The notes: generated by a model from the letters alone, not told the origin. A stretch of 64,000 nucleotides of DNA from Entomortierella parvispora E1425 (GCA_020891255.1 BQFW01000004.1:930001-994000), one strand, 5' to 3'; positions 17,762-41,700 are shown, numbered from the stretch's first letter. Made by a program: numbers and translations.

Positions 17762-20700
17762 TTACAACTGGCTCAAACGTTCCTGGGACAACTCCTCGGG
17801 CAACTTCTCTCCAAAGTGAGAGTACAACTTCTTGGCAAACAAGGCGACAATCTCGGGCAGTCGCATGTTATCGATGGGCATGGCCTCCTGAGCCTTGCCC
17901 TCAGTCTCGCTGCGGGCGTGCTCCATCAAGGCCTGACCGGACTGGTCATCCAGACGCATGAAGCCTTCCAGCTCGTGGGGGGCGTTCTGCCATCCTCCGA
18001 CGTGCAGAGACACCCAGGCGCGGGGGCGCTGGACTTGGCGGGGCAGCAGATCAATGGGCAGCTCGCGGTAGGTCTGAGCGGTGCCAGAGCGGTAATCAAT
18101 CACACCATCGGGGGCTCCAGTATCCACATTCATTCCAACTTCTCCTAACTCGGGCAAGCTTGCGACTGATGATAAAAAGATAAAAAAAATAATGACCATA
18201 TCAGTAAAGCTGAAAAAAAAGTGACGATGTCCAACAACAATAATGGGATATTCAATAAAATCCTTACAGAAAGTAGACTTCTCTTTCTCGACATCGGTGC
18301 TCGAAGAGCTTGCACCGCCAGAGCGACGTCTGGCAGCTTCGGCCTCGGCGTGGGCGATAGCCTCAAACTGAGCCTGGGACAGGGTCGAAGAGATAACAGC
18401 ACCAGTGGGAGCTCCAGCAGCACGTTCTTGAGTCACAGTCTGCTCCGTCGATGAACGAACAACAGTGTCATCATGGGACGACGTCACAGACTGCTCAGTC
18501 AACACAACCTTGTCGGCTTCAATCACCTGGCGTTCACGGGCCACGATCGTCTTTTCCTCATAATCCTCAACGACCTCCTCAATCTCCTCGGTCTCCTCGA
18601 AGGTCTCATAAGTCTTGACCTCATACGACCAAGCATCTAGAAACAAATAAATTTACAAAAAATGAGTAACCGAATCATAGAAACTCATCACACCACCCTG
18701 GCTAAATATGCTTACCATTGACGGCGGTCTCGCGCTCAGTCCACCGCACTCCAAACTTGTCATGGTAAGTGACCTGGAAAGCAGTCTTGGCCTCCTCGAT
18801 GGTCTTGTGGGGTCCCTCAAGCTTGTAGTCAGTCTCGCCCCAGCGGACGTAGACATAGTAAACGCTCTCGGTGCTGTTGTACAACAACTGGGTAATGTAG
18901 GTAACGCCAGTCGACTTCTCGGTCAGGACGGCATCATACACCTCGTCGTCGTAGTAGACATAGGAGGTCTTGGCAATGGGGCAGACCTTGTCGACGTGAG
19001 CCTTGCGGGTGGTAAGCACCTGGACAGTGCGCTTCCAGACGCCATCGACCTGAGTCAAGGCACCAGAGGCAGCAGCACCAGCACCAGAAGCCAGGCGACG
19101 GAACCATGAGGACTTCTTGGAAACAGCAGGCACGGCAACAACTCCAGTCTCATGGGTGGTGACGACCTCCTTGATGACCTCAACACCTTCAGTAACAACG
19201 GCCTCCTCCTTAACATGCTCCACAACAACCTCACCTTCCTGAGTAGTCGTGGTCGTATAGGTCGTGGTAGTAGAGCCAGCAAGACCATCAACTCCTGAAA
19301 CAGTAGACTGCTCCCGGCTCACAATGGTGGAGACCTCCTTCTCGTCAACGACCTCTTCAATCTCTTCAGTCTCCTCGAAGGTCTCATAAGTCTTCGCCTC
19401 GTATGACCAGGTATCTAGAAACAAATGAATTTACAAAATATTAGTAACCGAATAATTGTAACCCATCACACCGTGCTGCTGACTACGCTTACCATTGACG
19501 GCGGTCTCGCGCTCAGTCCACTGCACTCCAAACTTGTCTTGGTAGGTAACCTGGAAAGCAGACTTGGCGGCCTCAATAGTCCTGTGGGGTCCCTCGAGCT
19601 TGTAATCAGTCTCACCCCAGCGGATGTAGACGTAATACACGCTCTCAGAGGTGTTGTACAACAACTGGGTGATATAGGTGACACCAGTCGACTTTTCGGT
19701 CAACACGGCATCATACACCTCATCATCATAGTAGACATAGGAAGTCTTGGCAATAGGGCAGATCTTATCGACATGGGCCTTGCGGGTGGTAAGGACCTGG
19801 ACAGTACGCTTCCAGACGCCATCGACCTGAGTCAATGCACCCGAAGCAGCAGCACCAGCACCAGAGGCAATGCGACGGAACCAGGAAGATCCCTTGGAAA
19901 CAGCAGGTTGAGCAATCACTCCCTTTCCAGTTGTGATGACAGTGACCTCAATAGGCTGTTCCTCAGTGATGGAGGTCTTTTCAACGATATGCTCAACGGT
20001 AGTTTCGACATTGACAACATCCTCTTCAGTCGTCGAGATCACAACCTCCTTTGACTTAACCTGATCATCAACAACAATGGCCTTCCCTTGAACCTCTTCC
20101 ACAACAACATCGTCCTTGACTGTTACTTCAACCGAGGCATGCTCAACGGTGGATTGGTCAACCACCGGTGTGGCGTCACGATGGGTGATAGTTTCGACTT
20201 CAACAGCGTCAACAACCTCCTCCATCTCCTCAGTCTCATCAAAAGCTTCATAAGTCTTAACTTCATAGCTCCAAGAATCTATAGACAATAAATAGTAAAT
20301 TAGAAACTTGACCTCGATTGCAAGACAGTATTAATATAAAAGGCAATCAAACTAAATCATACCGCTGACGGCAGTCTCGCGCTCAGTCCACTGGACACCG
20401 AACTTGTCATGGTAAGTAACTTGGAAAGCGGATTTGGCCTCCTCGATGGTCTTGTGGGGTCCCTCAAGCTTGTAGTCAGTCTCGCCCCAGCGGACGTAGA
20501 CGTAGTAAACGCTCTCGGTGCTGTTGTACAACAACTGGGTAATATAGGTAACGCCAGTCGACTTCTCGGTCAGGACGGCATCATACACCTCGTCGTCGTA
20601 GTAGACATAGGAGGTCTTGGCAATGGGGCAGACCTTGTCAACATGGGCCTTGCGGATGGTAAGGACCTGGACAGTGCGCTTCCAGACGCCATCGACCTGA

Positions 20701-23700
20701 GTCAAGGCACCAACAGCAGCAACTCCAGCACCAGTGGCAAGACGACGGAACCAGGAAGATCCCTTGGAAACGGCAGGCTTGGCAACGACACCAGTCTCCT
20801 TGGTAATGACGGTCTCCTTGGCACCCTCCTCGACGATGACATCCTCCTTGGTGGTGTGCTCGAGAACAACCTCCTCGGTGGTGGTAGTGGTAGAGGTGTG
20901 CTTCTCGACCTCAACCTGATCATCCTTCTTCTCAACAATCTCCTCGCGGGTAACCTCGGTGGTGATGGCAGTCTCGTCGACAACCTCTTCAATCTCCTCG
21001 GTCTCCTCGAAGGTCTCGTAGGTCTTCACTTCATAGGTGAAGGAATCGTTGACGGCAGTCTCGCGCTCAGTCCACTCAACTCCGAACTTGTCATGGTAAG
21101 TAACCTGGAAAGCAGTCTTGGCCTCCTCAATGGTCTTGTGAGGTCCCTCGAGCTTGTAGTCAGTCTCGCCCCAGCGGACGTAGACGTAGTAAACGCTCTC
21201 GGTGCTGTTGTACAACAACTGGGTAATGTAGGTAACGCCAGTCGACTTCTCGGTCAGGACGGCATCATACACCTCGTCGTCGTAGTAGACATAGGAGGTC
21301 TTGGCAATGGGGCAGACCTTGTCAACATGGGCCTTGCGGGTGGTAAGGACCTGGACAGTGCGCTTCCAGACGCCATCGACCTGAGTCAAGGCACCAACAG
21401 CAGCAACACCAGCACCAGTGGCAAGGCGACGGAACCAGGAAGATCCCTTGGAAACGGCAGGCTTGGCAACGACACCAGTCTCCTTGGTAATGACGGTCTC
21501 CTTGGCACCCTCCTCGACGATGACATCCTCCTTGGTGGTATGCTCGAGAACAACCTCCTCGGTGGTGGTGGCAGTGGAGGTGTGCTTCTCGACCTCGACC
21601 TGCTCGTCCTTCTTCTCAACAATCTCCTCGCGGGCAACCTCGGTGGTGATGGCAGTCTCATCGACGACCTCTTCAATCTCCTCGGTCTCCTCGAAGGTCT
21701 CGTAAGTCTTGACCTCATAGGTGAAGGAATCTAGTTATAAAAAGAGAAATTAATAAGGAGAATCCATGGCAAGCAGTCGATTTGAGTGCTCGTCTGTATT
21801 GTTCTTACCATTGACAGCAGTCTCGCGCTCAGTCCACTGGACACCAAACTTGTCGTGGTAAGTGACCTGGAAAGCAGACTTGGCCTCCTCGATGGTCTTG
21901 TGGGGTCCCTCGAGCTTGTAGTCAGTCTCGCCCCAGCGGACGTAGACGTAGTAAACGCTCTCGGTGCTGTTGTACAACAACTGGGTAATGTAGGTAACGC
22001 CAGTCGACTTCTCAGTCAAAACAGCATCGTACACCTCATCGTCGTAGTAGACATAGGAGGTCTTGGCAATGGGGCAGACCTTGTCAACATGGGCCTTGCG
22101 GGTGGTAAGGACCTGGACAGTGCGCTTCCAGACGCCATCGACCTGAGTCAAGGCACCAGCAGCAGCAACACCAGCACCAGTGGCAAGGCGACGGAACCAG
22201 GAAGATCCCTTGGAAACGGCAGGCTTGGCAACGACACCAGTCTCCTTGGTAATGACGGTCTCCTTGGCACCCTCCTCGACGATGACATTCTCCTTGGTGG
22301 TGTGCTCGAGAACGACCTCCTCGGTGGTGGTAGTGGTAGAGGTGTGCTTCTCGACCTCAACCTGATCATCCTTCTTCTCAACAATCTCCTCGCGGGCAAC
22401 CTCGGTGGTGATGGCAGTCTCGTCGACAACCTCTTCAATCTCCTCGGTCTCCTCGAAGGTCTCGTAAGTCTTGACCTCATAGGTGAAGGAATCTAGTTAT
22501 AAGAAGAGAAATTAATAAGGAGAAATCATGGCAAGCAGTCGATTTGAGTGCTCGTCTGTATTGTTCTTACCATTGACAGCAGTCTCGCGCTCAGTCCACT
22601 GGACACCAAAATTGTCGTGGTAAGTAACTTGGAAAGCAGTCTTGGCCTCCTCAATGGTCTTGTGGGGTCCCTCGAGCTTGTAGTCAGTCTCGCCCCAGCG
22701 GACGTAGACGTAGTAAACGCTCTCGGTGCTGTTGTACAACAACTGGGTAATGTAGGTAACGCCAGTCGACTTCTCGGTCAGGACGGCATCGTACACCTCG
22801 TCGTCGTAGTAGACATAGGAGGTCTTGGCAATGGGGCAGACCTTGTCAACATGGGCCTTGCGGGTGGTAAGGACCTGGACAGTGCGCTTCCAGACGCCAT
22901 CGACCTGAGTCAAGGCACCAGCAGCAGCAACACCAGCACCAGTGGCAAGGCGACGGAACCAGGAAGATCCCTTGGAAACGGCAGGCTTGGCAACGACACC
23001 AGTCTCCTTGGTAATGACGGTCTCCTTGGCACCCTCCTCGACGATGACATCCTCCTTGGTGGTATGCTCGAGAACAACCTCCTCGGTGGCGGTGGCAGTG
23101 GAGGTGTGCTTCTCGACCTCAACCTGATCATCCTTCTTCTCAACAGTCTCCTCACGGACAACCTCGGTGGTGATGGCAGTCTCATCCACGATCTCCTCAA
23201 TTTCCTCAGTCTCCTCGAAGGTCTCGTAAGTCTTGACCTCATAAGTGAAGGAATCTAGTTATAAAAAGAGAAATTAATAAGGACAATCCATGGCAAGCAG
23301 GCCGATTTGAGTGTTCGTCTGTATTGCTCTTACCATTGACAGCAGTCTCGCGCTCAGTCCACTCAACTCCGAACTTGTCATGGTAAGTAACCTGGAAAGC
23401 AGACTTGGCCTCCTCAATGGTCTTGTGGGGTCCCTCGAGCTTGTAGTCAGTCTCGCCCCAGCGGACGTAGACGTAGTAAACGCTCTCGGTGCTGTTGTAC
23501 AACAACTGGGTAATGTAGGTAACGCCAGTCGACTTCTCGGTCAAGACGGCATCATACACCTCGTCGTCGTAGTAGACATAGGAGGTCTTGGCAATGGGGC
23601 AGACCTTGTCAACATGGGCCTTGCGGATGGTAAGGACCTGGACAGTGCGCTTCCAGACGCCATCGACCTGAGTCAAGGCACCAGCAGCAGCAACTCCAGC

Positions 23701-26700
23701 ACCAGTGGCAAGACGACGGAACCAGGAAGATCCCTTGGAAACGGCAGGCTTGGCAACGACACCAGTCTCCTTGGTAATGACGGTCTCCTTGGCACCCTCC
23801 TCGACGATGACATCCTCCTTGGTGGTGTGCTCGAGAACAACCTCCTCGGTGGTGGTGACAGTGGAGGTGTGCTTCTCGATCTCGACCTGCTCGTCCTTCT
23901 TCTCAACAGTCTCCTCACGGACAACCTCGGTGGTAATAGCGGTCTCATCCACGATCTCCTCAATCTCCTCGGTCTCCTCGAAGGTTTCGTAGGTCTTCAC
24001 TTCATAGGTGAAGGAATCGTTGACGGCAGTCTCGCGCTCAGTCCACTCAACTCCGAACTTGTCTTGGTAGGTAACCTGGAAAGCAGTCTTGGCCTCCTCG
24101 ATGGTCTTGTGGGGTCCCTCAAGCTTGTAGTCAGTCTCGCCCCAGCGGACGTAGACATAGTAAACGCTCTCGGTGCTGTTGTACAACAACTGGGTAATGT
24201 AGGTAACGCCAGTCGACTTCTCGGTCAAGACGGCATCGTACACCTCGTCGTCGTAGTAGACATAGGAGGTCTTGGCAATGGGGCAGACCTTGTCAACATG
24301 GGCCTTGCGGGTGGTAAGGACCTGGACAGTGCGCTTCCAGACGCCATCGACCTGAGTCAAGGCACCAACAGCAGCAACTCCAGCACCAGTGGCAAGACGA
24401 CGGAACCAGGAAGATCCCTTGGAAACGGCGGGCTTGGCAACGACACCGGTCTCCTTGGTAATGACGGTCTCCTTGGCACCCTCCTCGACGATGACATCCT
24501 CCTTGTTGGTATGCTCGAGAACAACCTCCTCGGTGGTGGTGGCAGTGGAGGTGTGCTTCTCCACCTCAACCTGCTCGTCCTTCTTCTGAACAGTCTCCTC
24601 GCGGACAACCTCGGTGGTGATGGCAGTCTCGTCGACAACCTCTTCAATCTCCTCGGTCTCCTCGAAGGTCTCGTAAGTCTTGACCTCATATGTGAAAGAA
24701 TCTAGTTGTAAAAATTGAAAAAAAATTAGGCAACATTATCAGATAAGGTATTTCTGTACTCGTCTCTAATTATCTTACCATTGACGGCAGTCTCGCGCTC
24801 AGTCCACTGGACACCGAACTTGTCGTGGTAAGTAACCTGGAAAGCGGATTTGGCCTCCTCGATGGTCTTGTGGGGTCCCTCAAGCTTGTAGTCAGTCTCG
24901 CCCCAGCGGACGTAGACGTAGTAAACGCTCTCGGTGCTGTTGTACAACAACTGGGTAATGTAGGTAACGCCAGTCGACTTCTCGGTCAGGACGGCATCAT
25001 ACACCTCGTCGTCGTAGTAGACATAGGAGGTCTTGGCAATGGGGCAGACCTTGTCAACATGGGCCTTGCGGGTGGTAAGGACCTGGACAGTGCGCTTCCA
25101 GACGCCATCGACCTGAGTCAAGGCACCAGCAGCAGCAACTCCAGCACCAGTGGCAAGACGACGGAACCAGGAAGATCCCTTGGAAACGGCAGGCTTGGCA
25201 ACGACACCAGTCTCCTTGGTAATGACGGTCTCCTTGGCACCCTCCTCGACGATGACATCCTCCTTGGTGGTATGCTCGAGAACAACCTCCTCGGTGGTGG
25301 TGACAGTGGAGGTGTGCTTCTCGACCTCGACCTGCTCGTCCTTCTTCTCAACAATCTCCTCGCGGGCAACCTCGGTGGTGATGGCAGTCTCGTCGACAAT
25401 CTCTTCAATCTCCTCAGTCTCCTCGAAGGTCTCGTAGGTCTTCACTTCATAGGTGAAGGAATCGTTGACGGCAGTCTCGCGCTCAGTCCACTCAACTCCG
25501 AACTTGTCATGGTAAGTAACCTGGAAAGCAGACTTGGCCTCCTCGATGGTCTTGTGGGGTCCCTCAAGCTTGTAGTCAGTCTCGCCCCAGCGGACGTAGA
25601 CGTAGTAAACGCTCTCGGTGCTGTTGTACAACAACTGGGTAATGTAGGTAACGCCAGTCGACTTCTCGGTCAGGACGGCATCATACACCTCGTCGTCGTA
25701 GTAGACATAGGAGGTCTTGGCAATGGGGCAGACCTTGTCAACATGGGCCTTGCGGATGGTAAGGACCTGGACAGTGCGCTTCCAGACGCCATCGACCTGA
25801 GTCAAGGCACCAGCAGCAGCAACTCCAGCACCAGTGGCAAGACGACGGAACCAGGAAGATCCCTTGGAAACGGCAGGCTTGGCAACGACACCAGTCTCCT
25901 TGGTAATGACGGTCTCCTTGGCACCCTCCTCGACGATGACATCCTCCTTGTTGGTATGCTCGAGAACAACCTCCTCGGTGGTGGTGGCAGTGGAGGTGTG
26001 CTTCTCGACCTCAACCTGATCATCCTTCTTCTCAACAGTCTCCTCACGGACAACCTCGGTGGTGATGGCAGTCTCATCCACGATCTCCTCAATTTCCTCA
26101 GTCTCCTCGAAGGTCTCGTAAGTCTTGACCTCATAAGTGAAGGAATCTAGTTATAAAAAGAGAAATTAATAAGGACAATCCATGGCAAGCAGGCCGATTT
26201 GAGTGTTCGTCTGTATTGCTCTTACCATTGACAGCAGTCTCGCGCTCAGTCCACTCAACTCCGAACTTGTCATGGTAAGTAACCTGGAAAGCAGACTTGG
26301 CCTCCTCAATGGTCTTGTGGGGTCCCTCGAGCTTGTAGTCAGTCTCGCCCCAGCGGACGTAGACATAGTAAACGCTCTCGGTGCTGTTGTACAACAACTG
26401 GGTAATGTAGGTAACGCCAGTCGACTTCTCGGTCAAGACGGCATCGTACACCTCGTCGTCGTAGTAGACATAGGAGGTCTTGGCAATGGGGCAGACCTTG
26501 TCAACATGGGCCTTGCGGATGGTAAGGACCTGGACAGTGCGCTTCCAGACGCCATCGACCTGAGTCAAGGCACCAACAGCAGCAACTCCAGCACCAGTGG
26601 CAAGACGACGGAACCAGGAAGATCCCTTGGAAACGGCGGGCTTGGCAACGACACCGGTCTCCTTGGTAATGACGGTCTCCTTGGCACCCTCCTCGACGAT

Positions 26701-29700
26701 GACATCCTCCTTGTTGGTATGCTCGAGAACAACCTCCTCGGTGGTGGTGGCAGTGGAGGTGTGCTTCTCCACCTCAACCTGCTCGTCCTTCTTCTGAACA
26801 GTCTCCTCGCGGACAACCTCGGTGGTGATGGCAGTCTCGTCGACAACCTCTTCAATCTCCTCGGTCTCCTCGAAGGTCTCGTAAGTCTTGACCTCATATG
26901 TGAAAGAATCTAGTTGTAAAAATTGAAAAAAAATTAGGCAACATTATCAGATAAGGTATTTCTGTACTCGTCTCTAATTATCTTACCATTGACGGCAGTC
27001 TCGCGCTCAGTCCACTGGACACCGAACTTGTCGTGGTAAGTAACCTGGAAAGCGGATTTGGCCTCCTCGATGGTCTTGTGGGGTCCCTCAAGCTTGTAGT
27101 CAGTCTCGCCCCAGCGGACGTAGACGTAGTAAACGCTCTCGGTGCTGTTGTACAACAACTGGGTAATGTAGGTAACGCCAGTCGACTTCTCGGTCAAGAC
27201 GGCATCATACACCTCGTCGTCGTAGTAGACATAGGAGGTCTTGGCAATGGGGCAGACCTTGTCAACATGGGCCTTGCGGGTGGTAAGGACCTGGACAGTG
27301 CGCTTCCAGACGCCATCGACCTGAGTCAAGGCACCAGCAGCAGCAACTCCAGCACCAGTGGCAAGACGACGGAACCAGGAAGATCCCTTGGAAACGGCAG
27401 GCTTGGCAACGACACCAGTCTCCTTGGTAATGACGGTCTCCTTGGCACCCTCCTCGACGATGACATCCTCCTTGGTGGTATGCTCGAGAACAACCTCCTC
27501 GGTGGTGGTGACAGTGGAGGTGTGCTTCTCGACCTCGATCTGCTCGTCCTTCTTCTCAACAATCTCCTCGCGGGCAACCTCGGTGGTGATGGCAGTCTCG
27601 TCGACAATCTCTTCAATCTCCTCAGTCTCCTCGAAGGTCTCGTAGGTCTTCACTTCATAGGTGAAGGAATCGTTGACGGCAGTCTCGCGCTCAGTCCACT
27701 CAACTCCGAACTTGTCATGGTAAGTAACCTGGAAAGCAGACTTGGCCTCCTCGATGGTCTTGTGGGGTCCCTCAAGCTTGTAGTCAGTCTCGCCCCAGCG
27801 GACGTAGACGTAGTAAACGCTCTCGGTGCTGTTGTACAACAACTGGGTAATGTAGGTAACGCCAGTCGACTTCTCGGTCAAGACGGCATCATACACCTCG
27901 TCGTCGTAGTAGACATAGGAGGTCTTGGCAATGGGGCAGACCTTGTCAACATGGGCCTTGCGGATGGTAAGGACCTGGACAGTGCGCTTCCAGACGCCAT
28001 CGACCTGAGTCAAGGCACCAGCAGCAGCAACTCCAGCACCAGTGGCAAGGCGACGGAACCAGGAAGATCCCTTGGAAACGGCAGGCTTGGCAACGACACC
28101 AGTCTCCTTGGTAATGACGGTCTCCTTGGCACCCTCCTCGACGATGACATCCTCCTTGGTGGTATGCTCGAGAACAACCTCCTCGGTGGTGGTGGCAGTG
28201 GAGGTGTGCTTCTCGACCTCAACCTGATCATCCTTCTTCTCAACAATCTCCTCGCGGGCAACCTCGGTGGTGATGGCAGTCTCATCCACGATTTCCTCAA
28301 TTTCCTCAGTCTCCTCGAAGGTCTCGTAAGTCTTGACCTCATAGGTGAAGGAATCTAGTTATAAAAAGAGAAATTAATAAGGAAAATTCATGGCAAGCAG
28401 GCCGATTTGAGTGTTCGTCTGTATTGCTCTTACCATTGACAGCAGTCTCGCGCTCAGTCCACTCAACTCCGAACTTGTCATGGTAAGTAACCTGGAAAGC
28501 AGTCTTGGCCTCCTCAATGGTCTTGTGGGGTCCTTCGAGCTTGTAGTCAGTCTCGCCCCAGCGGACGTAGACGTAGTAAACGCTCTCGGTGCTGTTGTAC
28601 AACAACTGGGTAATGTAGGTAACGCCAGTCGACTTCTCGGTCAAGACGGCATCATACACCTCGTCGTCGTAGTAGACATAGGAGGTCTTGGCAATGGGGC
28701 AGACCTTGTCAACATGGGCCTTGCGGGTGGTAAGGACCTGGACAGTGCGCTTCCAGACGCCATCGACCTGAGTCAAGGCACCAGCAGCAGCAACTCCAGC
28801 ACCAGTGGCAAGACGACGGAACCAGGAAGATCCCTTGGAAACGGCAGGCTTGGCAACGACACCAGTCTCCTTGGTAATGACGGTCTCCTTGGCACCCTCC
28901 TCGACGATGACATTCTCCTTGGTGGTGTGCTCGAGAACAACCTCCTCGGTGGTGGTGACAGTGGAGGTGTGCTTCTCGACCTCGACCTGCTCGTCCTTCT
29001 TCTCAACAGTCTCCTCACGGACAACCTCGGTGGTAATAGCGGTCTCATCCACGATCTCCTCAATTTCCTCAGTCTCTTCGAAGGTCTCGTAGGTCTTGAC
29101 CTCATATGTGAAAGAATCTAGTTGTAAAAATTGAAAAAAATTAGGCAACATTATCAGATAAGGTATTTCTGTACTCGTCTCTAATTATCTTACCATTGAC
29201 GGCAGTCTCGCGCTCAGTCCACTGGACACCGAACTTGTCATGGTAAGTAACTTGGAAAGCAGTCTTGGCCTCCTCAATGGTCTTGTGGGGTCCCTCGAGC
29301 TTGTAGTCAGTCTCGCCCCAGCGGACGTAGACGTAGTAAACGCTCTCGGTGCTGTTGTACAACAACTGGGTAATGTAGGTAACGCCAGTCGACTTCTCGG
29401 TCAGGACGGCATCATACACCTCGTCGTCGTAGTAAACATAGGAGGTCTTGGCAATGGGGCAGACCTTGTCAACATGGGCCTTGCGGGTGGTAAGGACCTG
29501 GACAGTGCGCTTCCAGACGCCATCGACCTGAGTCAAGGCACCAACAGCAGCAATTCCAGCACCAGTGGCAAGACGACGGAACCAGGAAGATCCCTTGGAA
29601 ACGGCAGGCTTGGTAACGACACCAGTCTCCTTGGTAATGACGGTCTCCTTGGCACCCTCCTCGACGATGACATCCTCCTTGGTGGTATGCTCGAGAACAA

Positions 29701-32700: not shown

Positions 32701-35700
32701 GGTCTCCTCGAAGGTCTCGTAAGTCTTGACCTCATAAGTGAAGGAATCTAGTCATAAAAAGAGAAATTAATAAGGAGAAATCATGGCAAGAAACCGATTT
32801 GAGTACTCGTCTGTATTGCTCTTACCATTGACAGCAGTCTCGCGCTCAGTCCACTGGACACCAAACTTGTCATGGTAAGTAACTTGGAAAGCAGTCTTGG
32901 CCTCCTCAATGGTCTTGTGAGGTCCCTCGAGCTTGTAGTCAGTCTCGCCCCAGCGGACGTAGACGTAGTAAACGCTCTCGGTGCTGTTGTACAACAACTG
33001 GGTAATGTAGGTAACGCCAGTCGACTTCTCGGTCAAGACGGCATCGTACACCTCGTCGTCGTAGTAGACATAGGAGGTCTTGGCAATGGGGCAGACCTTG
33101 TCGACGTGAGCCTTACGAGTAGTAAGAACCTGGACAGTGCGCTTCCAGACACCATCGACCTGAGTGAAGGCACCCACTGCAGCAACACCAGCGCCAGTAG
33201 CAAGGCGGCGGAACCAGGAAGATCCCTTGGAAACAGCGGGCTTGGTCACCACACCACCCTCCTTAACCACAACCTTCTCAGTGGTCTTGACATCTGCAGT
33301 AGCCTGCTGCTCCTTCTTCAGCTCCTCAACCTTGGACTCTTCGACGACCTCCTCAATCTCCTCGGTCTCCTCGAAGGTCTCGTATGTCTTGACCTCATAG
33401 GTGAAGGAATCGTTCACAGCAGTTTCACGCTCAGTCCACTCAACTCCGAACTTGTCATGGTAAGTAACCTGGAAAGCAGACTTGGCCTCCTCAATGGTCT
33501 TGTGGGGTCCCTCAAGCTTGTAGTCAGTCTCGCCCCAGCGGACGTAGACGTAGTAAACGCTCTCGGTGCTGTTGTACAACAACTGGGTAATGTAGGTAAC
33601 GCCAGTCGACTTCTCGGTCAGGACGGCATCATACACCTCGTCGTCGTAGTAGACATAGGAGGTCTTGGCAATGGGGCAGACCTTGTCAACATGGGCCTTG
33701 CGCGTGGTAAGGACCTGGACAGTGCGCTTCCAGACGCCATCGACCTGAGTCAAGGCACCAACAGCAGCAACTCCAGCACCAGTGGCAAGACGACGGAACC
33801 AGGAAGATCCCTTGGAAACGGCAGGCTTGGCAACGACACCAGTCTCCTTGGTAATGACGGTCTCCTTGGCACCCTCCTCGACGATCACATCCTCCTTGGT
33901 GGTATGCTCGAGAACAACCTCCTCGGTGGTGGTGGCAGTGGAGGGGTGCTTCTCCACCTCAACCTGCTCGTCCTTCTTCTCAACAGTCTCCTCGTCGACA
34001 ATTTCCTCGATCTCCTCGGTTTCCTCGAAGGTCTCGTAGGTCTTGACCTCATAGGTGAATGAATCGTTGACGGCAGTCTCGCGCTCAGTCCACTGGACAC
34101 CGAACTTGTCATGGTAAGTAACCTGGAAAGCAGACTTGGCCTCCTCAATGGTCTTGTGGGGTCCCTCGAGCTTGTAGTCAGTCTCGCCCCAGCGGACGTA
34201 GACGTAGTAAACGCTCTCGGTGCTGTTGTACAACAACTGGGTAATGTAGGTAACGCCAGTCGACTTCTCGGTCAGGACGGCATCGTACACCTCGTCGTCG
34301 TAGTAGACATAGGAGGTCTTGGCAATGGGGCAGACCTTGTCAACATGGGCCTTGCGGGTGGTAAGGACCTGGACAGTGCGCTTCCAGACGCCATCGACCT
34401 GAGTCAAGGCACCAGCAGCAGCAACTCCAGCACCAGTGGCAAGACGACGGAACCAGGAAGATCCCTTGGAAACGGCAGGCTTGGCAACGACACCAGTCTC
34501 CTTGGTAATGACGGTCTCCTTGGCACCCTCCTCGACGAGGACATCCTCCTTGGTGGTATGCTCGAGAACAACTTCCTCGGTGGTGGTGGCAGTGGAGGTG
34601 TGCTTCTCGACCTCAACCTGATCATCCTTCTTCTCAACAATCTCCTCGCGGGCAACCTCGGTGGTGATGGCAGTCTCGTCGACAACCTCTTCAATCTCCT
34701 CGGTCTCCTCGAAGGTCTCGTAAGTCTTGACCTCATAGGTGAAGGAATCTAGTTATAAAAAGAGAAATTAATAAGGAGAAATCATGGCAAGCAGCCGATT
34801 TGAGTGCTCGTCTGTATTGTTCTTACCATTGACAGCAGTCTCGCGCTCAGTCCACTCAACTCCGAACTTGTCATGGTAAGTGTCCTGGAAAGCAGTCTTG
34901 GCCTCCTCGATGGTCTTGTGGGGTCCCTCGAGCTTGTAGTCAGTCTCGCCCCAGCGGACGTAGACATAGTAAACGCTCTCGGTGCTGTTGTACAACAACT
35001 GGGTAATGTAGGTAACGCCAGTCGACTTCTCGGTCAAGACGGCATCATACACCTCATCGTCGTAGTAGACATAGGAGGTCTTGGCAATGGGGCAGACCTT
35101 GTCAACATGGGCCTTGCGGGTGGTAAGGACCTGGACAGTGCGCTTCCAGACGCCATCGACCTGAGTCAAGGCACCAGCAGCAGCAACTCCAGCACCAGTG
35201 GCAAGGCGACGGAACCAGGAAGATCCCTTGGAAACGGCAGGCTTGGCAACGACACCAGTCTCCTTGGTAATGACGGTCTCCTTGGCACCCTCCTCGACGA
35301 TGACATTCTCCTTGGTGGTGTGCTCGAGAACAACCTCCTCGGTGGTGGTGGCAGTGGAGGTGTGCTTCTCGACCTCGACCTGCTCGTCCTTCTTCTCAAC
35401 AGTCTCCTCACGGACAACCTCGGTGGTAATAGCGGTCTCATCCACGATCTCCTCAATTTCCTCAGTCTCTTCGAAGGTCTCGTAGGTCTTGACCTCATAT
35501 GTGAAAGAATCTAGTTGTAAAAATTGAAAAAAATTAGGCAACATTATCAGATAAGGTATTTCTGTACTCGTCTCTAATTATCTTACCATTGACGGCAGTC
35601 TCGCGCTCAGTCCACTGGACACCGAACTTGTCATGGTAAGTAACTTGGAAAGCAGTCTTGGCCTCCTCAATGGTCTTGTGGGGTCCCTCGAGCTTGTAGT

Positions 35701-38700
35701 CAGTCTCGCCCCAGCGGACGTAGACGTAGTAAACGCTCTCGGTGCTGTTGTACAACAACTGGGTAATGTAGGTAACGCCAGTCGACTTCTCGGTCAAGAC
35801 GGCATCGTACACCTCGTCGTCGTAGTAGACATAGGAGGTCTTGGCAATGGGGCACACCTTGTCGACGTGAGCCTTGCGGGTAGTAAGGACCTGGACAGTG
35901 CGCTTCCAGACGCCATCGACCTGAGTCAAGGCACCAGCAGCAGCAACTCCAGCACCAGTGGCAAGGCGACGGAACCAGGAAGATCCCTTGGAAACGGCAG
36001 GCTTGGCAACGACACCAGTCTCCTTGGTAATGACGGTCTCCTTGGCACCCTCCTCGACGATGACATCCTCCTTGGTGGTGTGCTCGAGAACAACCTCCTC
36101 GGTGGTGGTAGTGGTAGAGGTGTGCTTCTCGACCTCAACCTGATCATCCTTCTTCTCAACAATCTCCTCGCGGGTAACCTCGGTGGTGATGGCAGTCTCG
36201 TCGACAACCTCTTCAATCTCCTCGGTCTCCTCGAAGGTCTCGTAGGTCTTCACTTCATAGGTGAAGGAATCGTTGACGGCAGTCTCGCGCTCAGTCCACT
36301 CAACTCCGAACTTGTCATGGTAAGTAACCTGGAAAGCAGTCTTGGCCTCCTCAATGGTCTTGTGAGGTCCCTCGAGCTTGTAGTCAGTCTCGCCCCAGCG
36401 GACGTAGACGTAGTAAACGCTCTCGGTGCTGTTGTACAACAACTGGGTAATGTAGGTAACGCCAGTCGACTTCTCGGTCAGGACGGCATCATACACCTCG
36501 TCGTCGTAGTAGACATAGGAGGTCTTGGCAATGGGGCAGACCTTGTCAACATGGGCCTTGCGGGTGGTAAGGACCTGGACAGTGCGCTTCCAGACGCCAT
36601 CGACCTGAGTCAAGGCACCAGCAGCAGCAACTCCAGCACCAGTGGCAAGACGACGGAACCAGGAAGATCCCTTGGAAACGGCGGGCTTGGCAACGACACC
36701 GGTCTCCTTGGTAATGACGGTCTCCTTGGCACCCTCCTCGACGATGACATCCTCCTTGGTGGTATGCTCGAGAACAACCTCCTCGGTGGTGGTGACAGTG
36801 GAGGTGTGCTTCTCGACCTCGATCTGCTCGTCCTTCTTCTCAACAATCTCCTCGCGGATAACCTCGGTGGTGATGGCAGTCTCGTCGACAACCTCTTCAA
36901 TCTCCTCGGTCTCCTCGAAGGTCTCGTAAGTCTTGACCTCATAGGTGAAGGAATCTAGTTATAAAAAGAGAAATTAATAAGGAGAATCCATGGCAAGCAG
37001 TCGATGTGAGTGCTCGTCTGTATTGCTCTTACCATTGACAGCAGTCTCGCGCTCAGTCCACTGGACACCAAACTTGTCGTGGTAAGTGACCTGGAAAGCA
37101 GTCTTGGCCTCCTCAATGGTCTTGTGGGGTCCCTCGAGCTTGTAGTCAGTCTCGCCCCAGCGGACGTAGACGTAGTAAACGCTCTCGGTGCTGTTGTACA
37201 ACAACTGGGTAATGTAGGTAACGCCAGTCGACTTCTCAGTCAAAACGGCATCGTACACCTCATCATCATAGTAGACATAGGAGGTCTTGGCAATGGGGCA
37301 GACCTTGTCAACATGGGCCTTGCGGGTAGTAAGGACCTGGACAGTACGCTTCCAGACGCCATCGACCTGAGTCAAGGCACCCACTGCAGCAACACCAGCG
37401 CCAGTGGCAAGGCGGCGGAACCAGGAAGATCCCTTGGAAACAGCGGGCTTGGTCACAACACCACCCTCCTTAACCACAACCTTCTCAGTGGTCTTGACAT
37501 CTGCAGTAGCCTGCTGCTCCTTCTTCAGCTCCTCAACCTTGGACTCTTCGACGACCTCCTCAATCTCCTCGGTCTCCTCGAAGGTCTCGTAAGTCTTTAC
37601 CTCATAGGTGAAGGAATCGTTCACAGCAGTTTCACGCTCAGTCCACTGAACTCCGAACTTGTCATGGTAGGTAACCTGGAAAGCAGACTTGGCCTCCTCG
37701 ATAGTCTTGTGGGGTCCCTCGAGCTTGTAGTCAGTCTCGCCCCAGCGGACGTAGACGTAGTAAACGCTCTCGGTGCTGTTGTACAACAACTGGGTAATGT
37801 AGGTAACGCCAGTCGACTTCTCAGTCAAAACAGCATCGTACACCTCATCGTCGTAGTAGACATAGGAGGTCTTGGCAATGGGGCAGACCTTGTCAACATG
37901 GGCCTTGCGGGTAGTAAGAACCTGGACAGTGCGCTTCCAGACGCCATCGACCTGAGTCAAGGCACCCACTGCAGCAACACCGGCACCGGTAGCAAGACGG
38001 CGGAACCAGGAAGATCCCTTTGAAACGGCTGGCTTGGCAATAACACCGACCTCCTTTGTTGTGGTGGCTTCGGTGGTAGTGCCAGTCGACTTGATATCGG
38101 AAACATCGACCTCAGTGTTCACACTTTCGACTGTAGTCTCGATGGTGACATCCACGCCAGAAGTGCTGGTCTCGACAGCCTCCTTGTTAATGACTTGGTT
38201 GTCGACAGCGACAGTCTCGCCCTGGATAGTGCTCAAAACGGTGTTGTCTTGAATGACCGTAGTGGAAGTCTCAGTCTTCTTGACGTTTTCCTCGACGCCA
38301 ATTTCTCGCTCGCGGTTGATGATAGTCGCAGCCTCCTCTTCGTCATATACCTCCTCGACCTCCTCGATCTCCTCAAAGGTCTCGTAGGTCTTGACCTCAT
38401 AGGCCCAGGTGTCGCTGACAGTTGTCTCGCGCTCAGTCCACTGGACACCGAACTTGTCGTGGTAAGTAACCTGGAAAGCGGTCTTGGCCTCCTCGATGGT
38501 CTTGTGAGGTCCCTCGAGCTTGTAGTCAGTCTCGCCCCAGCGGACGTAGACGTAGTAGACACTCTCGGTGCTGTTGTACAACAATTGGGTAATGTAGGTA
38601 ACGCCAGTCGACTTCTCAGTCAAAACGGCATCGTAAACCTCGTTGTCGTAGTAGACATAGGAAGTCTTGGCAATGGGGCACACCTTGTCGACGTGAGCCT

Positions 38701-41700
38701 TGCGGGTAGTAAGAACCTGGACGGTACGCTTCCAGACGCCATCGACCTGAATCAAGGCACCAGCAGCGGCAACACCCGCACCAGTAGCAAGACGACGGAA
38801 CCAAGAAGATCCCTTGGAAACAGCAGGCTTGTTGATCTCAAGAACTGAGGTGGTTGATTCAGTGGTGGTCTTCTGCTCCTTGGAGGCTTCATCCTTGACA
38901 ACTGTCTCGACAACTTGGTGATGAGTGATTGTGTTGTCCTCGGTGGAAACACCAGTGCGCTCCCCACTGACGATTGTGGTAATCTCCTCAACATCATCAT
39001 CAGCCTCAGTGATGTACTGCTCCTCAGTCTCGAAGTCGTGATGCACGATCAACCACTCAGCTATTATTGAAGGAAGCAGTGGAGTCAGTAACTACATTGC
39101 CGCACACTTTTCTGGAACCATACATCATTTCATAATTCGGCTTCCTTACTGTTCGTCACAATGGCACGCTCCTCCCAGGCGACACCAAAAGTCTCGCGGT
39201 ACTTTGTGGTGAAGACAGACTTGGCCTGGTCAACGGTCTCGTAAGGTCCATCAAGAGTGTAATCGCTCTCGTCCCAGCGGAGGTATACGTAGTAAGTCTT
39301 GGTGACAGTGTTGTACAACATCTGGGAGACATAGGTTACGCCAGTTGATCGTTGGGTGAGAATGGTGTGGTAGCTTTCGCTGTCCTTGTAGACCTGAACC
39401 TGATCGGCAATGGGGCACACGGAATCGACCAAAGAGTGGTGGGTGGATGTGGTTGAGCTAATGGAGGTTCCAACCTGCTTTCGAGCCACCTCTCCGCCAG
39501 AGCTCTCCTCGCGGTTTTCGGTGACAGTCTCGTAGGCGATCTCCTCGGTTGACCAGCTCTCGCCGAGAGCGACGGGGTTGTTACGCTCGCTCCACTCAAT
39601 GCCGATCTTATCCGCAAAGGTTTCCTTGTAGGCGATCTCGGCGGCCTCAACGGTCTTGTAAGGACCCTCCAATGAGCCGTTGGTTGAGCCCCACTGGACG
39701 TAGACGTAGTATACCTTCTCGGTGTTATCCAAGAGGAGCTGCATCTCATAGCTCACGTTGGTACCTGCCTCCACCAGGTGAGTTGCCCAGACAGTTCCGT
39801 CACGCTCCACGACAGTGGCATTCTCCAAAGAGCACTGGGGATGAACACGGACAATGTAGCGGGTGATGGTACGGGTGGTGGTGGTCGTGATGGTGTACTT
39901 GGTAATGTACTGGACATAACGAGTGTACACGGTTCTGTACTCCGTAATTTCGCGCTCGATTTCTAAATCAAAATATAAAGATATCGTCAGAACAAAATTC
40001 CTGTTGCATTCTAGTATGAAGCAGTGAGGACATACCATTGTAGTCAGAAGTGTTCTCGGACGCCAACCATCCAAAGTTGGTGGTCTCGTACAACCCTAGG
40101 ATAAAAATATGCCAACAAGTTAGTTCTCTTGCTCATTTAACAGCAGTCACTCTTGCCACCAGAAGGCTCTTCTTACAGACAGTCTGAGAAGCAGATCGGT
40201 CAACCAAGACAGCCTTCTCATTGATAAAATCGACGACGTGGCTGGTGTTGGAGACCAAGGACAATTCTCCTTGCTCAGAGAACTGCCACATCTGACGAGA
40301 AGAGTCCGATTGCTATTAATTGAAAGTAGAGAATGGATCAGTTTGGAGTTCAAAGGAAATGATTAAAAGTGTCCCTTTGAATCACGAACCTTGGAGGCGA
40401 GGATCAAGCCACCCTCAACCGTAGCAGTCAGATAAAGACCGGTCAAACGGTTAATGATGTAAGAATCAACCAACTTCCAGAGCTGAAGCTCAACCAAGGC
40501 ATGGCGCTCTGCAGACGAGAAGCGCTTCTGGACATCAAGGAGAATCGAGGCTCCCTCAGCTCCCTTCTCAAGGAGTTGAGTAGAAGAAATGGAGGCGACC
40601 TTGTTGCCGGCAACGAGGTAGAACCAGGACTCCCTGGGAGCAACGACGTACTGCTCAGTTTCAGCATACTCAATAACCTCATCAGCTATGAACGACGAAA
40701 AGAATGTTAGTCTGACATCAAAAATTAAAGCACAAACTGCCATAATCATGCTGAAACGGAATACATACCACCAGCAGATGATCGCATGACGACCTCCTCG
40801 AACTCCTCGTAGAACTCGTAATCCTCTCTGTTCTCGACCTCGAGGTAAACAACCTCGGTCCAGATGAGCCAAGAGAAGGAAACCTCATACACCAACCCTA
40901 TTGAGATTATAGACACAATTAGTAGCCTTTTCGATTTCAAAAAATAAATAGTGAAGGTACACGCAGGGGTTGCCTTACAGGTAATGGCGGTAGTGCGCTC
41001 AACAAGGGTGACAGATCCATCACGAACATTGAGAGCCAAGTCCGAGTGACCAACAGGGAAGATGTATCCACCCTCAATGGTCCACTTGATGGAGTTCTTG
41101 TGCAAAGCCTGAACCAAACGGGCTCCCTGCTTAGCATCTCCCTCAATGGTCAAGGCAAGACCAGTACGCTTGTTGATCAGGTAGCCATCCTTAAGGGTCC
41201 AGAGCTGGATATCAAGGAGAGCATGCTGGTTGGCAGAAGCGGCGGTGGTCTGGGGGTGGACCGTAGCATAGGCGCCAACCTTCATGTGGTTCTTGCCAAA
41301 GCCGTGGTCGATATCAATAACGTAGCCGTTAGAGGTGCGGATGAAGAAGTACGAGCACTCGGAGAACTTCTCTATCTTGCGGGTAACAGCCTTCTCTCTG
41401 GCCAAGAAGGTGACTTCGCTCTCGTTCAAGGTGTCGAGTTGTTCCTCGACCTGCTCGGTGACAATGGGCTCCAATGTCAACCAAGAGAAATGAACCTCGG
41501 CAAAACTCCCTAGAAGTAGATCCGTTTATCAGTCAATTATTCATTCTTGAGAAATATGCAGAAAGCTCTCGCAATTGCGATTCATCGCGTGATATCTTAC
41601 AGCTGTGGAGGATCTCTCCGCGACGCTCCTTGCGGATGAAGGCGCGGGATCCCTGGCGACCATAAGACAAAAAGAGAACAAACTCCTTGCGGGCAGCGAG

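What the first reader, a model, noticed from the sequence alone, without database searches (positions are those of the whole stretch)
18640..39860. WGR module appears PARP-derived but has lost its signature Arg (WGR to WGE): probable neofunctionalisation
Seen: each unit reads KAHVDKVCPIAKTSYVYYDDEVYDAVL..KSTGVTYITQLLYNSTESVYYVYVRWGETDYKLEGPHKTIEEAKTAFQVTYHDKFGVEW. Known: PARP WGR domains follow VD..C/S....AHV......Y.A.L......YY.LQLL......Y.VF..WGRVG..G......EEA...F...F..KTG..W, and the Arg contributes to DNA-break sensing and allostery. Here the VDxxCP lead-in is retained, Arg is replaced by Glu (Ser or Asp-Glu in the two divergent copies), and the GRVG loop is shortened. No PARP catalytic domain is visible. 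Inference: a nucleic-acid-sensing fold has been converted into a structural or mechanical repeat.
Basis: partly seen in the sequence, partly recalled or inferred. Interest (0 to 1): 0.78.

Follow-up and report, generated by a model that had tools for sequence, protein, structure and literature searches.

The report
Thirty Arg-less PARP-type WGR domains
A soil fungus (Mortierellomycota) has copied the DNA-break-sensing WGR domain of PARP enzymes 30 times inside one giant enzyme-free protein, after removing the residues that hold DNA. The same altered domain also sits on ion channels and immune-type NTPases of this phylum, so it has probably taken on a new, non-DNA role.

Summary
A minus-strand gene (ATG 46517, stop 17762-17764, about 8,600-8,750 aa) carries 30 WGR-like units: unit 1 WGS, unit 2 WDE, units 3-30 WGE.

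**Fold and origin**
- A five-unit profile hits PARP2, PARP3 and PARP1 WGR in the PDB (E 1.5e-7 to 2e-4).
- No PARP regulatory or catalytic domain lies in the window.

**Loss of DNA binding**
- The Arg loss is family-wide: 1 of 84 domains keeps R.
- Two DNA-contact loops are each 4 residues shorter.
- K130, Q159 and K179 equivalents are replaced.
- The domains are acidic (median pI 4.8).

**Distribution**
- Every family member I looked up is from Mortierellomycota.
- The cassette (hydrophobic lead, WGE domain, acidic linker) also occurs on TRP-like channels and ARM-NACHT proteins, each checked as a single ORF in genomic DNA, and in GTPase gene models.
- The giant gene's beta-trefoil head is homologous to 2,400-2,900-aa Mucorales proteins that I take to be Gellins. 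They lack the WGE array.

The PARP-type origin and new role are supported. A purely mechanical role is untested, and I favour a multivalent "sticker" in a gel-forming protein. The scan's note s1-190091 covers the same gene.

The parts
17762..46517 (-). Whole gene: about 8 beta-trefoils, 30 WGR-like units and a conserved C-terminal domain. About 8,600-8,750 aa. The exon model is predicted only, with no RNA support.
   Evidence: ATG at 46517 and TAA at 17762-17764. A greedy splice model gives 36 exons and 8,756 aa, with some introns misplaced and corrected by eye. Orthologues show the same domain order.
40090..46517 (-). N-terminal region of ricin-B-type beta-trefoil domains (Gellin-like head). 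It is not part of the WGR finding but belongs to the same protein.
   Evidence: Pfam RicinB_lectin_2 and Ricin_B_lectin, E 1e-13 to 6e-5. Best solved relative is 6lci_A 'mdaA-1', E 2e-9 and 7e-9, over the whole domain. Mucorales homologues score E 8e-75 to 1e-51.
39565..39858 (-). WGR-like unit 1, divergent copy with WGS. It lacks the Gly/Ala-rich lead.
   Evidence: 43% identical to a canonical unit. Pfam WGR 23.5 bits for its exon. Its orthologues in other genera form their own clade, support 100.
39148..39441 (-). WGR-like unit 2, divergent copy with WDE.
   Evidence: 49% identical to a canonical unit. It has its own orthologue clade, support 98.
18708..38779 (-). Units 3-30: canonical WGE units with periods of 585-870 nt. 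Median pairwise DNA identity over the 342-nt core is 95.6%.
23956..24429 (-). Unit 23 (158 aa), the unit that was modelled. Residues 41-135 form the WGR fold (pLDDT 87-96).
   Evidence: AlphaFold2 on the 55-row family alignment A2. Foldseek, VIA-align and Atlas matches are to PARP WGR.
24358..24429 (-). Example of the lead segment that precedes each canonical domain: SSWFRR followed by a Gly/Ala/Val-rich hydrophobic stretch. It is predicted to be unstructured.
   Evidence: pLDDT below 50 for model residues 1-24. It is the only hydropathy peak of the period. It is conserved in the channel and NACHT cassettes.
23737..23973 (-). Example of the 79-aa Glu/Thr/Val-rich acidic linker between units, net charge -15.
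   Evidence: The full 228-aa period has net charge -20 and pI 4.6.
23255..23333 (-). Example of the phase-1 inter-unit intron (GTAAG...TAG, 78-79 nt). It is present after 19 of the 30 units and absent at the same codon after the other 11.
17765..18165 (-). C-terminal domain exon (about 134 aa), preceded by a predicted 102-nt phase-1 intron at 18166-18267.
   Evidence: Conserved in orthologues at E 1e-63 to 1e-46. No Pfam family. AlphaFold model unusable, pLDDT 51.

Best explanation
**Shown.** Each unit is a true WGR fold of the eukaryotic PARP type. It has been cut loose from any PARP enzyme and stripped of the PARP way of holding a DNA break:
- Arg of WGR changed to Glu/Asp.
- The Asn127 loop and the loop after the motif are each shortened by 4 residues.
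- Lys130 changed to Val/Ile, Gln159 to Asp/Glu, and Lys179 to Thr/Ile/Ser.
- The domain is acidic.

It forms a cassette: a short basic/hydrophobic lead (SSWFRR plus a Gly/Ala-rich stretch), the WGE domain, then a strongly acidic Glu/Thr/Val-rich linker. Every member whose source I looked up is from Mortierellomycota. The cassette has been attached to several unrelated proteins.

**Inferred.** In this gene the cassette has been amplified to 30 near-identical copies behind a Gellin-like beta-trefoil head.
- Folded WGE domains with their hydrophobic leads act as many weak 'stickers', binding each other, membranes or a common partner.
- The polyanionic linkers (about -20 per period, roughly -550 to -600 for the array) act as 'spacers' that keep the protein soluble.
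- Wounding (flow, Ca2+ entry) lets the protein form a network, as Gellins gel the protoplasm of aseptate Mucorales hyphae.
- Single or double cassettes on channels and NACHT proteins would dock those proteins to the same structure.

**My odds.** Fold, PARP-type origin and loss of break binding: about 0.9. Sticker/gelation mechanism: about 0.4.
For: **Fold and origin**
- Profile against PDB: PARP2 1.5e-7, PARP3 2.4e-7, PARP1 2e-4.
- tblastn with a chytrid PARP: 8.5e-12, 30% identity over 133 aa.
- Model made from family sequences only: core pLDDT 87-96.
- Foldseek: top 30 hits are all PARP1/2/3 WGR, and the next hit has E 0.7.
- Atlas structural neighbours are all PARPs.
- Of the 89 next-best sequence hits, 79 carry Pfam WGR, 47 PARP_reg and 39 the PARP catalytic domain.

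**Loss of DNA binding**
- PARP2 contact residues and their mutant phenotypes come from PMC6294510, mapped.
- Charge: family median -6 and pI 4.8, against +1 and pI 7.9 for PARP-type domains.

**Constraint kept**
- Non-synonymous to synonymous difference ratio 0.18.
- The family is monophyletic, support 100.
- The acidic residues at the former Arg and Gln159 sites are 87-88% conserved, rank 36-40 of 98 columns.

**Cassette on other proteins**
-.
- Single-ORF proof for the channel and the NACHT protein.

**Gellin-like context**
-.
- Mucorales homologues lack WGE and the C-terminal domain.
- Gellin function as summarised in PMC10873517 and PMC12712441.
Against: - No experiment or expression data: no RNA run was listed.
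- The sticker role rests on architecture only.
- The WG of the motif is less conserved than in PARPs (W 64%, G 71%), which would also fit a relaxed, merely structural bead.
- I could not read the Gellin paper. The equation of 6lci 'mdaA-1' and the Mucorales homologues with Gellin is from memory.
- The GTPase fusions were not checked at DNA level and may be merged gene models.
- The copy number of 30 rests on this assembly alone. The one complete orthologue model has 5 units.
Confidence: 0.5

Rival explanations
1. Passive mechanical element. The WGE domains are only folded beads that unfold under force, and the linkers are entropic springs, like titin Ig/PEVK. There is no specific binding surface.
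For: - A tandem array of near-identical units with disordered acidic linkers.
- From my memory of Nguyen et al. 2021, Gellin beta-trefoils unfold under flow.
- Conservation of the WG motif is relaxed relative to PARPs.
Against: - The same cassette occurs in one or two copies on TRP-like channel tails and after a NACHT domain, where a repeat spring has no obvious use.
- The acidic residues that replaced Arg and Gln159 are conserved above the domain median.
- Units 1 and 2 have been kept as distinct, position-specific copies across genera.
Confidence: 0.25
2. Ligand or partner sensor. The WGE domain recognises a specific molecule (a peptide, cation or small ligand). It acts as the sensing part of the NACHT proteins and channels, and the giant array is a high-capacity binder or decoy for the same ligand.
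For: - The cassette sits C-terminal to NACHT, where fungal NLR-like proteins usually carry their sensor repeats (the NLR layout is general knowledge).
- An acidic/aromatic patch is conserved at the former DNA face.
Against: - The 28 canonical units are almost identical and their differences are mostly synonymous. That is not the diversified pattern expected of recognition repeats.
- No ligand is suggested by any match.
Confidence: 0.12
3. Retained nucleic-acid or poly(ADP-ribose) binding. The array is a multivalent scaffold for DNA ends, RNA or PAR.
For: - The fold is retained in full.
- Tyr132, Trp151, Lys183 and probably Tyr201 equivalents are often kept (plus my reading of alignment A2).
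Against: - In PARP2 each of R153A, N127A and K179A alone abolishes stable DNA binding (PMC6294510). Here all three are lost together, along with K130 and Q159.
- Domain pI is 4.8 and the period has net charge -20.
- The cassette sits in the cytosolic tail of membrane channels.
Confidence: 0.07
4. Artefact: a decaying pseudogene, or an assembly that has wrongly multiplied one unit.
For: No RNA evidence. Most orthologue models are truncated at contig ends inside the array.
Against: - About 26 kb of coding sequence is open except at canonical GT..AG introns.
- There are 79 variable sites among the units, mostly synonymous.
- The same domain order is found in about 29 orthologues from Mortierellomycota.
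Confidence: 0.02

Closest known systems
WGR domain of DNA-dependent PARPs (human PARP1, PARP2, PARP3; fungal BRCT-WGR-PARP enzymes)
   Same: - Same VDxxC lead-in, QLL strand, YY.V strand, W..R after the helix, and C-terminal Y-containing strands.
- About 25-30% identity.
   Different: - No regulatory or catalytic domain.
- Arg replaced by Glu/Asp.
- Two DNA-contact loops each 4 residues shorter.
- K130, Q159 and K179 equivalents replaced.
- Acidic instead of neutral or basic.
- Present in 30 tandem copies.
Multi-WGR/WWE PARPs of chytrids, oomycetes and metagenomes (e.g. P0049 with 5 weak matches to my profile (4 to Pfam WGR) + 4 WWE + PARP; P0062, P0067, P0068)
   Same: They show that PARP-type WGR domains can be duplicated within one protein. 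They are among the best non-family hits of the unit profile.
   Different: They keep WGR (83 of 104 outgroup domains). They keep the PARP regulatory and catalytic domains. They have 2-5 copies with no acidic linkers.
Gellin, the wound-gelation protein of Mucorales (Nguyen et al. 2021, Curr Biol 31:271; architecture recalled from memory; function as cited in PMC10873517 and PMC12712441)
   Same: A giant cytoplasmic protein with a run of related beta-trefoil domains. The head of this gene is homologous to 2,400-2,900-aa Mucorales beta-trefoil proteins (E 8e-75 to 1e-51) and to the solved 'mdaA-1' domain 6lci. The organism is likewise an aseptate filamentous fungus.
   Different: The Mucorales proteins have no WGE unit and no C-terminal domain of this kind. 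The array of 30 WGE units is absent from the Mucorales homologues and seen only in Mortierellomycota.
Bacterial stand-alone WGR proteins (e.g. 2ra8, Bacteroides fragilis)
   Same: A WGR-type core without a PARP enzyme.
Titin-like giant proteins (works-like comparison only; general knowledge)
   Same: Folded beads alternating with charged, Glu/Val/Lys-rich unstructured segments in a protein of many thousand residues.
   Different: Unrelated fold and lineage. No evidence here of a force-bearing role.

Membership tests
WGR domain (Pfam PF05406; PARP-type WGR fold) | Significant sequence match to WGR profiles or known WGR domains | tested here: met
   A single canonical unit scores only 13.0-13.4 bits against the cut-off of 22. 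The two-unit exon scores 22.7 and the unit 1-2 exon 23.5. The family profile against PDB gives PARP2 WGR E 1.5e-7. tblastn with a chytrid PARP gives 8.5e-12.
WGR domain (Pfam PF05406; PARP-type WGR fold) | The WGR three-dimensional fold | tested here: met
   [not shown]
WGR domain (Pfam PF05406; PARP-type WGR fold) | The Trp-Gly-Arg motif that names the domain | tested here: not met
   WGE in 28 units, WGS in one and WDE in one. Family-wide, 1 R in 84 domains, against 83 WGR in 104 PARP-type domains.
DNA-dependent PARP (PARP1/2/3 type) | PARP regulatory and catalytic domains next to the WGR | tested here: not met
   No tblastn hit below E 1 anywhere in the window. No PARP family in any Pfam scan of the gene's exons or of the orthologues.
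DNA-dependent PARP (PARP1/2/3 type) | DNA-break contact residues of the WGR (PARP2 N127, K130, Y132, W151, R153, Q159, K179, K183, Y201; PMC6294510) | tested here: not met
   N127 loop deleted. K130 becomes V/I (K in 3 of 84). R153 becomes E/D (74 of 84). Q159 becomes D/E (74 of 85). K179 becomes T/I/S (K in 5 of 83). Kept in part: Y132, W151, K183.
Gellin (Mucorales wound-gelation proteins) | Run of related beta-trefoil domains homologous to those of the Mucorales proteins | tested here: met
   P0005 residues 1-1380 against Gilbertella, Mucor, Rhizopus, Pilobolus and other proteins of 2,471-2,906 aa: E 8e-75 to 3e-61, 23-25% identity over 65% of the query. 6lci_A E 2e-9.
Gellin (Mucorales wound-gelation proteins) | That those Mucorales proteins and 6lci are the published Gellins, and that the protein gels protoplasm on wounding | not testable with these tools
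   The paper is not held. No held paper names 6LCI or mdaA in this sense. The function needs wet-lab work.

The most novel reading that the evidence does not exclude
The WGE cassette is an assembly domain known so far only from Mortierellomycota, born from a PARP DNA sensor. It wires three things into one wound-response machine in aseptate hyphae: a 30-valent Gellin-like scaffold, TRP-like cation channels and NACHT NTPases. Ca2+ entering through the cassette-bearing channels would neutralise the polyanionic linkers and the acidic W-G-E-x-D face. That would trigger gelation and recruit the NACHT proteins.
Probability: 0.15. Interest if true: 0.85.

Novelty: new variant of a known kind. Interest (0 to 1): 0.66.

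Why it matters
**What is unusual.** WGR is known almost only as the DNA-break sensor that switches PARP1-3 on. Here is a clear natural case where that fold left the enzyme, lost its DNA-binding residues together, stayed under selection, and spread as a cassette in one fungal phylum. It is found on a giant Gellin-like protein, on ion channels and on immune-type NTPases.

**What it offers.**
- A test bed for what else the WGR fold can do.
- A candidate component for how aseptate Mortierellomycota, which include oil-producing industrial strains, seal wounds.

**A warning for annotation.**
- Single units fall below Pfam's cut-off.
- At least one orthologue is auto-named 'NAD(+) ADP-ribosyltransferase' in UniRef although it has no catalytic domain.
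- Nearly all orthologue models are truncated inside the array.

Tried and rejected
- **Tandem Repeats Finder** reported nothing, because the period exceeds its 500-nt limit. I located the units by motif instead.
- **Pfam on single canonical units** is below threshold, so I used a family profile, BLAST and structure.
- **RNA evidence:** no run was listed for 39100-43000. Read laying was therefore not used, and the splice model is unverified.
- **Greedy splice model:** my script misplaced several inter-unit introns and read through the last one. I corrected these by reading the junctions. I give the protein length only as a range.
- **No joined sequence was searched.** All searches used single exons or unit references.
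- **Domain tree:** the family is one clade, but its sister among PARPs is unresolved, support 42. No donor PARP lineage is claimed.
- **C-terminal domain:** no Pfam family. The AlphaFold model is too poor to search (pLDDT 51, 7-row alignment).
- **Gellin paper** is not held. Searches for 6LCI/mdaA and for Gellin in Mortierella gave only false hits. No held paper links WGR with Mortierellomycota.
- **Genome contigs** holds only bacteria and archaea, so I did not use it.
- **Rejected: a lineage-specific divergent PARP.** There is no catalytic domain.


Full report
**What is there**

The finding lies in one very large gene on the minus strand. The gene starts at ATG 46517 and stops at 17762-17764.

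A motif scan finds exactly 30 WGR-like units between 18708 and 39933.
- Unit 1 reads WGS, unit 2 reads WDE, and units 3-30 read WGE.
- Periods are 585-870 nt. The 28 canonical units have a median DNA identity of 95.6% over the 342-nt core.
- Differences between them are mostly synonymous: 4822 against 860 pairwise single-base codon differences, a ratio of 0.18. The array is therefore a coding sequence under constraint.

A phase-1 GTAAG...TAG intron of 78-79 nt sits at the same codon after 19 of the 30 units and is absent after the other 11.

Upstream of the array are ricin-B-type beta-trefoils. Downstream is a conserved C-terminal domain of about 134 aa with no Pfam family.

A rough splice model gives about 8,600-8,750 aa (corrected by eye). 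No RNA run was listed, so the model is unverified.

I did not test that.

**Is it a WGR domain, and of the PARP type?**

Pfam alone is marginal. One canonical unit scores 13 bits against a cut-off of 22, and the two-unit and unit 1-2 exons score 22.7 and 23.5. Stronger tests settle the question.
- **Profile against PDB.** A five-unit profile matches PARP2, PARP3 and PARP1 WGR at E 1.5e-7, 2.4e-7 and 2e-4, over positions 2-94 of 98.
- **BLAST.** Plain tblastn with a chytrid PARP gives 8.5e-12, with 30% identity over 133 residues.
- **Structure.** An AlphaFold2 model of a 158-aa unit was built from 55 family sequences with no PARP in the alignment and no templates. Its core has pLDDT 87-96.
  - The 30 best Foldseek matches are all PARP1/2/3 WGR, and the next hit has E 0.7.
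  - ESM Atlas structural neighbours are all eukaryotic PARPs.
- **Wide sequence search.** Searching 1.84 billion representatives with the unit profile gives a close family (68 hits below 1e-10) and then only PARP-type proteins. Of ranks 62-150, 79 of 89 carry Pfam WGR, 47 PARP_reg, 39 the catalytic domain and 28 WWE.

In a domain tree the family is one side of a branch with support 100. It sits on a long stem (0.94 changes per site) and its sister is unresolved. PARP-type origin is well supported, but the donor lineage cannot be named.

No PARP regulatory or catalytic sequence exists anywhere in the window.

**What changed in the domain**

The Arg loss is not peculiar to this gene. Among 84 family domains the motif is WGE (30), WSE (10), YGE (8) and similar, with a single R. 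Among 104 PARP-type domains, 83 read WGR.

I took the PARP2-DNA contacts and mutant data from Obaji et al. 2018 (PMC6294510) and mapped them through the profile alignment.

| PARP2 contact | State in the family |
|---|---|
| N127 loop | Missing; this loop is 4 residues shorter in every member |
| K130 | V/I |
| R153 | E/D in 74 of 84 |
| Loop after the motif | 4 residues shorter in every member |
| Q159 | D/E in 74 of 85 |
| K179 | T/I/S |
| Y132 | Often retained |
| W151 | Often retained (W 54, Y 16 of 84) |
| K183 | Often retained (48 of 83) |

In PARP2 each of R153A, N127A and K179A alone abolishes stable DNA binding. The combined loss makes PARP-style break binding very unlikely.

The domains are acidic: median net charge -6 and pI 4.8, with 1% above pI 7. 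PARP-type domains have +1 and pI 7.9.

The new acidic residues are themselves conserved (87-88% acidic, rank 36-40 of 98 columns). The W and G are less constrained than in PARPs. The old DNA face has been remodelled rather than simply released.

**The cassette and where else it occurs**

A canonical 228-aa period has three parts:
- A 21-aa lead (SSWFRR plus a Gly/Ala/Val-rich hydrophobic stretch, net +3, predicted unstructured).
- A 128-aa N-extension plus WGR core (net -8).
- A 79-aa Glu/Thr/Val-rich linker (net -15).

The period sums to -20, or roughly -550 to -600 over the array.

Every family member whose source I looked up is from Mortierellomycota. That covers 20 representatives plus 29 head orthologues, from Linnemannia, Gamsiella, Haplosporangium, Lunasporangiospora, Podila, Modicella, Dissophora, Lobosporangium, Actinomortierella, Gryganskiella, Mortierella and Entomortierella.

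The cassette occurs in four contexts:
1. **This gene's orthologues.** They always run beta-trefoils, unit 1, unit 2, then canonical units. Nearly all are cut off at contig ends. One complete model (M. claussenii) has 5 units and the C-terminal domain. Units 1 and 2 each have their own orthologue clades.
2. **TRP-like Ion_trans channels** with one or two cassettes in the C-terminal tail.
3. **ARM_5-NACHT proteins** with two cassettes.
4. **GTPase-containing gene models** in Podila. I did not check these at DNA level.

I verified in genomic DNA that the last channel helix and the cassette share one uninterrupted ORF (L001). I also verified that ARM_5, NACHT and the first cassette share one 1,329-codon open stretch (L002). 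An unverified note of this scan reports WGR-like domains in a VIT-vWA protein of the same genome.

**Context: a Gellin-like protein**

The beta-trefoils match the solved domain 6lci 'mdaA-1' better than any lectin, at E 2e-9 and 7e-9 over the full domain. The orthologous head region finds Mucorales proteins of 2,471-2,906 aa at E 8e-75 to 3e-61.

From memory, these are the Gellins of Nguyen et al. 2021: ten beta-trefoil domains, some unfolding under flow and some with hydrophobic membrane-binding motifs, which gel the protoplasm of wounded aseptate hyphae. I could not read that paper and rely on two secondary accounts for the function.

The Mucorales proteins contain no WGE unit and no such C-terminal domain. 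The array is absent from the Mucorales homologues and seen only in Mortierellomycota.

**How it most likely works**

- **Shown:** PARP-type WGR fold; no enzyme; DNA-contact set dismantled; acidic; conserved; reused as a cassette; amplified 30-fold here.
- **Inferred:**
  - The cassette is an interaction or targeting module.
  - In 30 copies separated by polyanionic spacers it gives a sticker-and-spacer protein suited to switch from soluble to network.
  - That fits a Gellin-like wound-gelation role.
  - Single cassettes would dock channels and NACHT proteins to the same structure.

I put about 0.9 on the shown part and about 0.4 on the mechanism.

It explains the array but not the one- and two-copy cassettes. 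Other rivals are a ligand sensor (0.12), retained nucleic-acid or PAR binding (0.07) and an artefact (0.02).

**Verdict**

- I found no held paper that links WGR with Mortierellomycota.
- I class it as a new variant of a known kind.

Noticed in passing
L001:7400-8800 (+), Mortierella sp. AM989; protein P0010 (also P0053, P0054, P0021, P0057): TRP-like Ion_trans channels of Mortierellomycota carry one or two WGE cassettes in their C-terminal tail. The last pore helix and the cassette lie in one uninterrupted ORF.
   Followed up: yes
L002:1131-5117 (+), Mortierella sp. AD032; protein P0011 (also P0022, P0066): ARM_5-NACHT (NLR-like) proteins end in two WGE cassettes. ARM_5, NACHT and the first cassette share one 1,329-codon open stretch.
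   Followed up: yes
P0043 (Podila verticillata), P0027 (Podila clonocystis): Gene models join dynamin/MMR_HSR1-type GTPase domains to a WGE cassette. They may be real fusions or merged neighbouring genes.
   Followed up: no
window 24726-26933 and 26934-29141: A three-unit block of 2,208 nt is duplicated in tandem at 98.1% identity, so the array grows by multi-unit segmental duplication.
   Followed up: partly
window 18637-39149, inter-unit junctions: The same phase-1 intron site (Asn | Asp-Ser-Phe) is occupied after 19 of 30 units and empty after 11. This is a mosaic also noted by the scan (s1-190175).
   Followed up: partly
window 19425-38848, + strand: The 209-464-aa ORFs on the + strand over the array are antisense images of the repeat (Leu/Gly/Asp-rich). 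They are not genes.
   Followed up: partly
window 17765-18165 (-): The C-terminal domain is conserved in orthologues (E 1e-63 to 1e-46) but has no Pfam family and no usable model. Here it stops 5 residues before the GPHRR end of several orthologues (four of six read GPHRR).
   Followed up: partly
window 13715-17536 (+): The neighbouring 1,273-aa open frame is Ser/Arg-rich with a Cys-rich C-terminus and has no Pfam family.
   Followed up: no
P0003 (Modicella reniformis, UniRef100_A0A9P6IJM8): An orthologue fragment with four WGE units and the C-terminal domain is auto-named 'NAD(+) ADP-ribosyltransferase' although no PARP domain is detected. This is a likely propagated misannotation.
   Followed up: partly
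P0173 (Mortierella claussenii, 2,663 aa, not marked partial): The only complete orthologue model has 5 WGE units against 30 here. Either copy number varies widely or short-read assemblies collapse the array.
   Followed up: no
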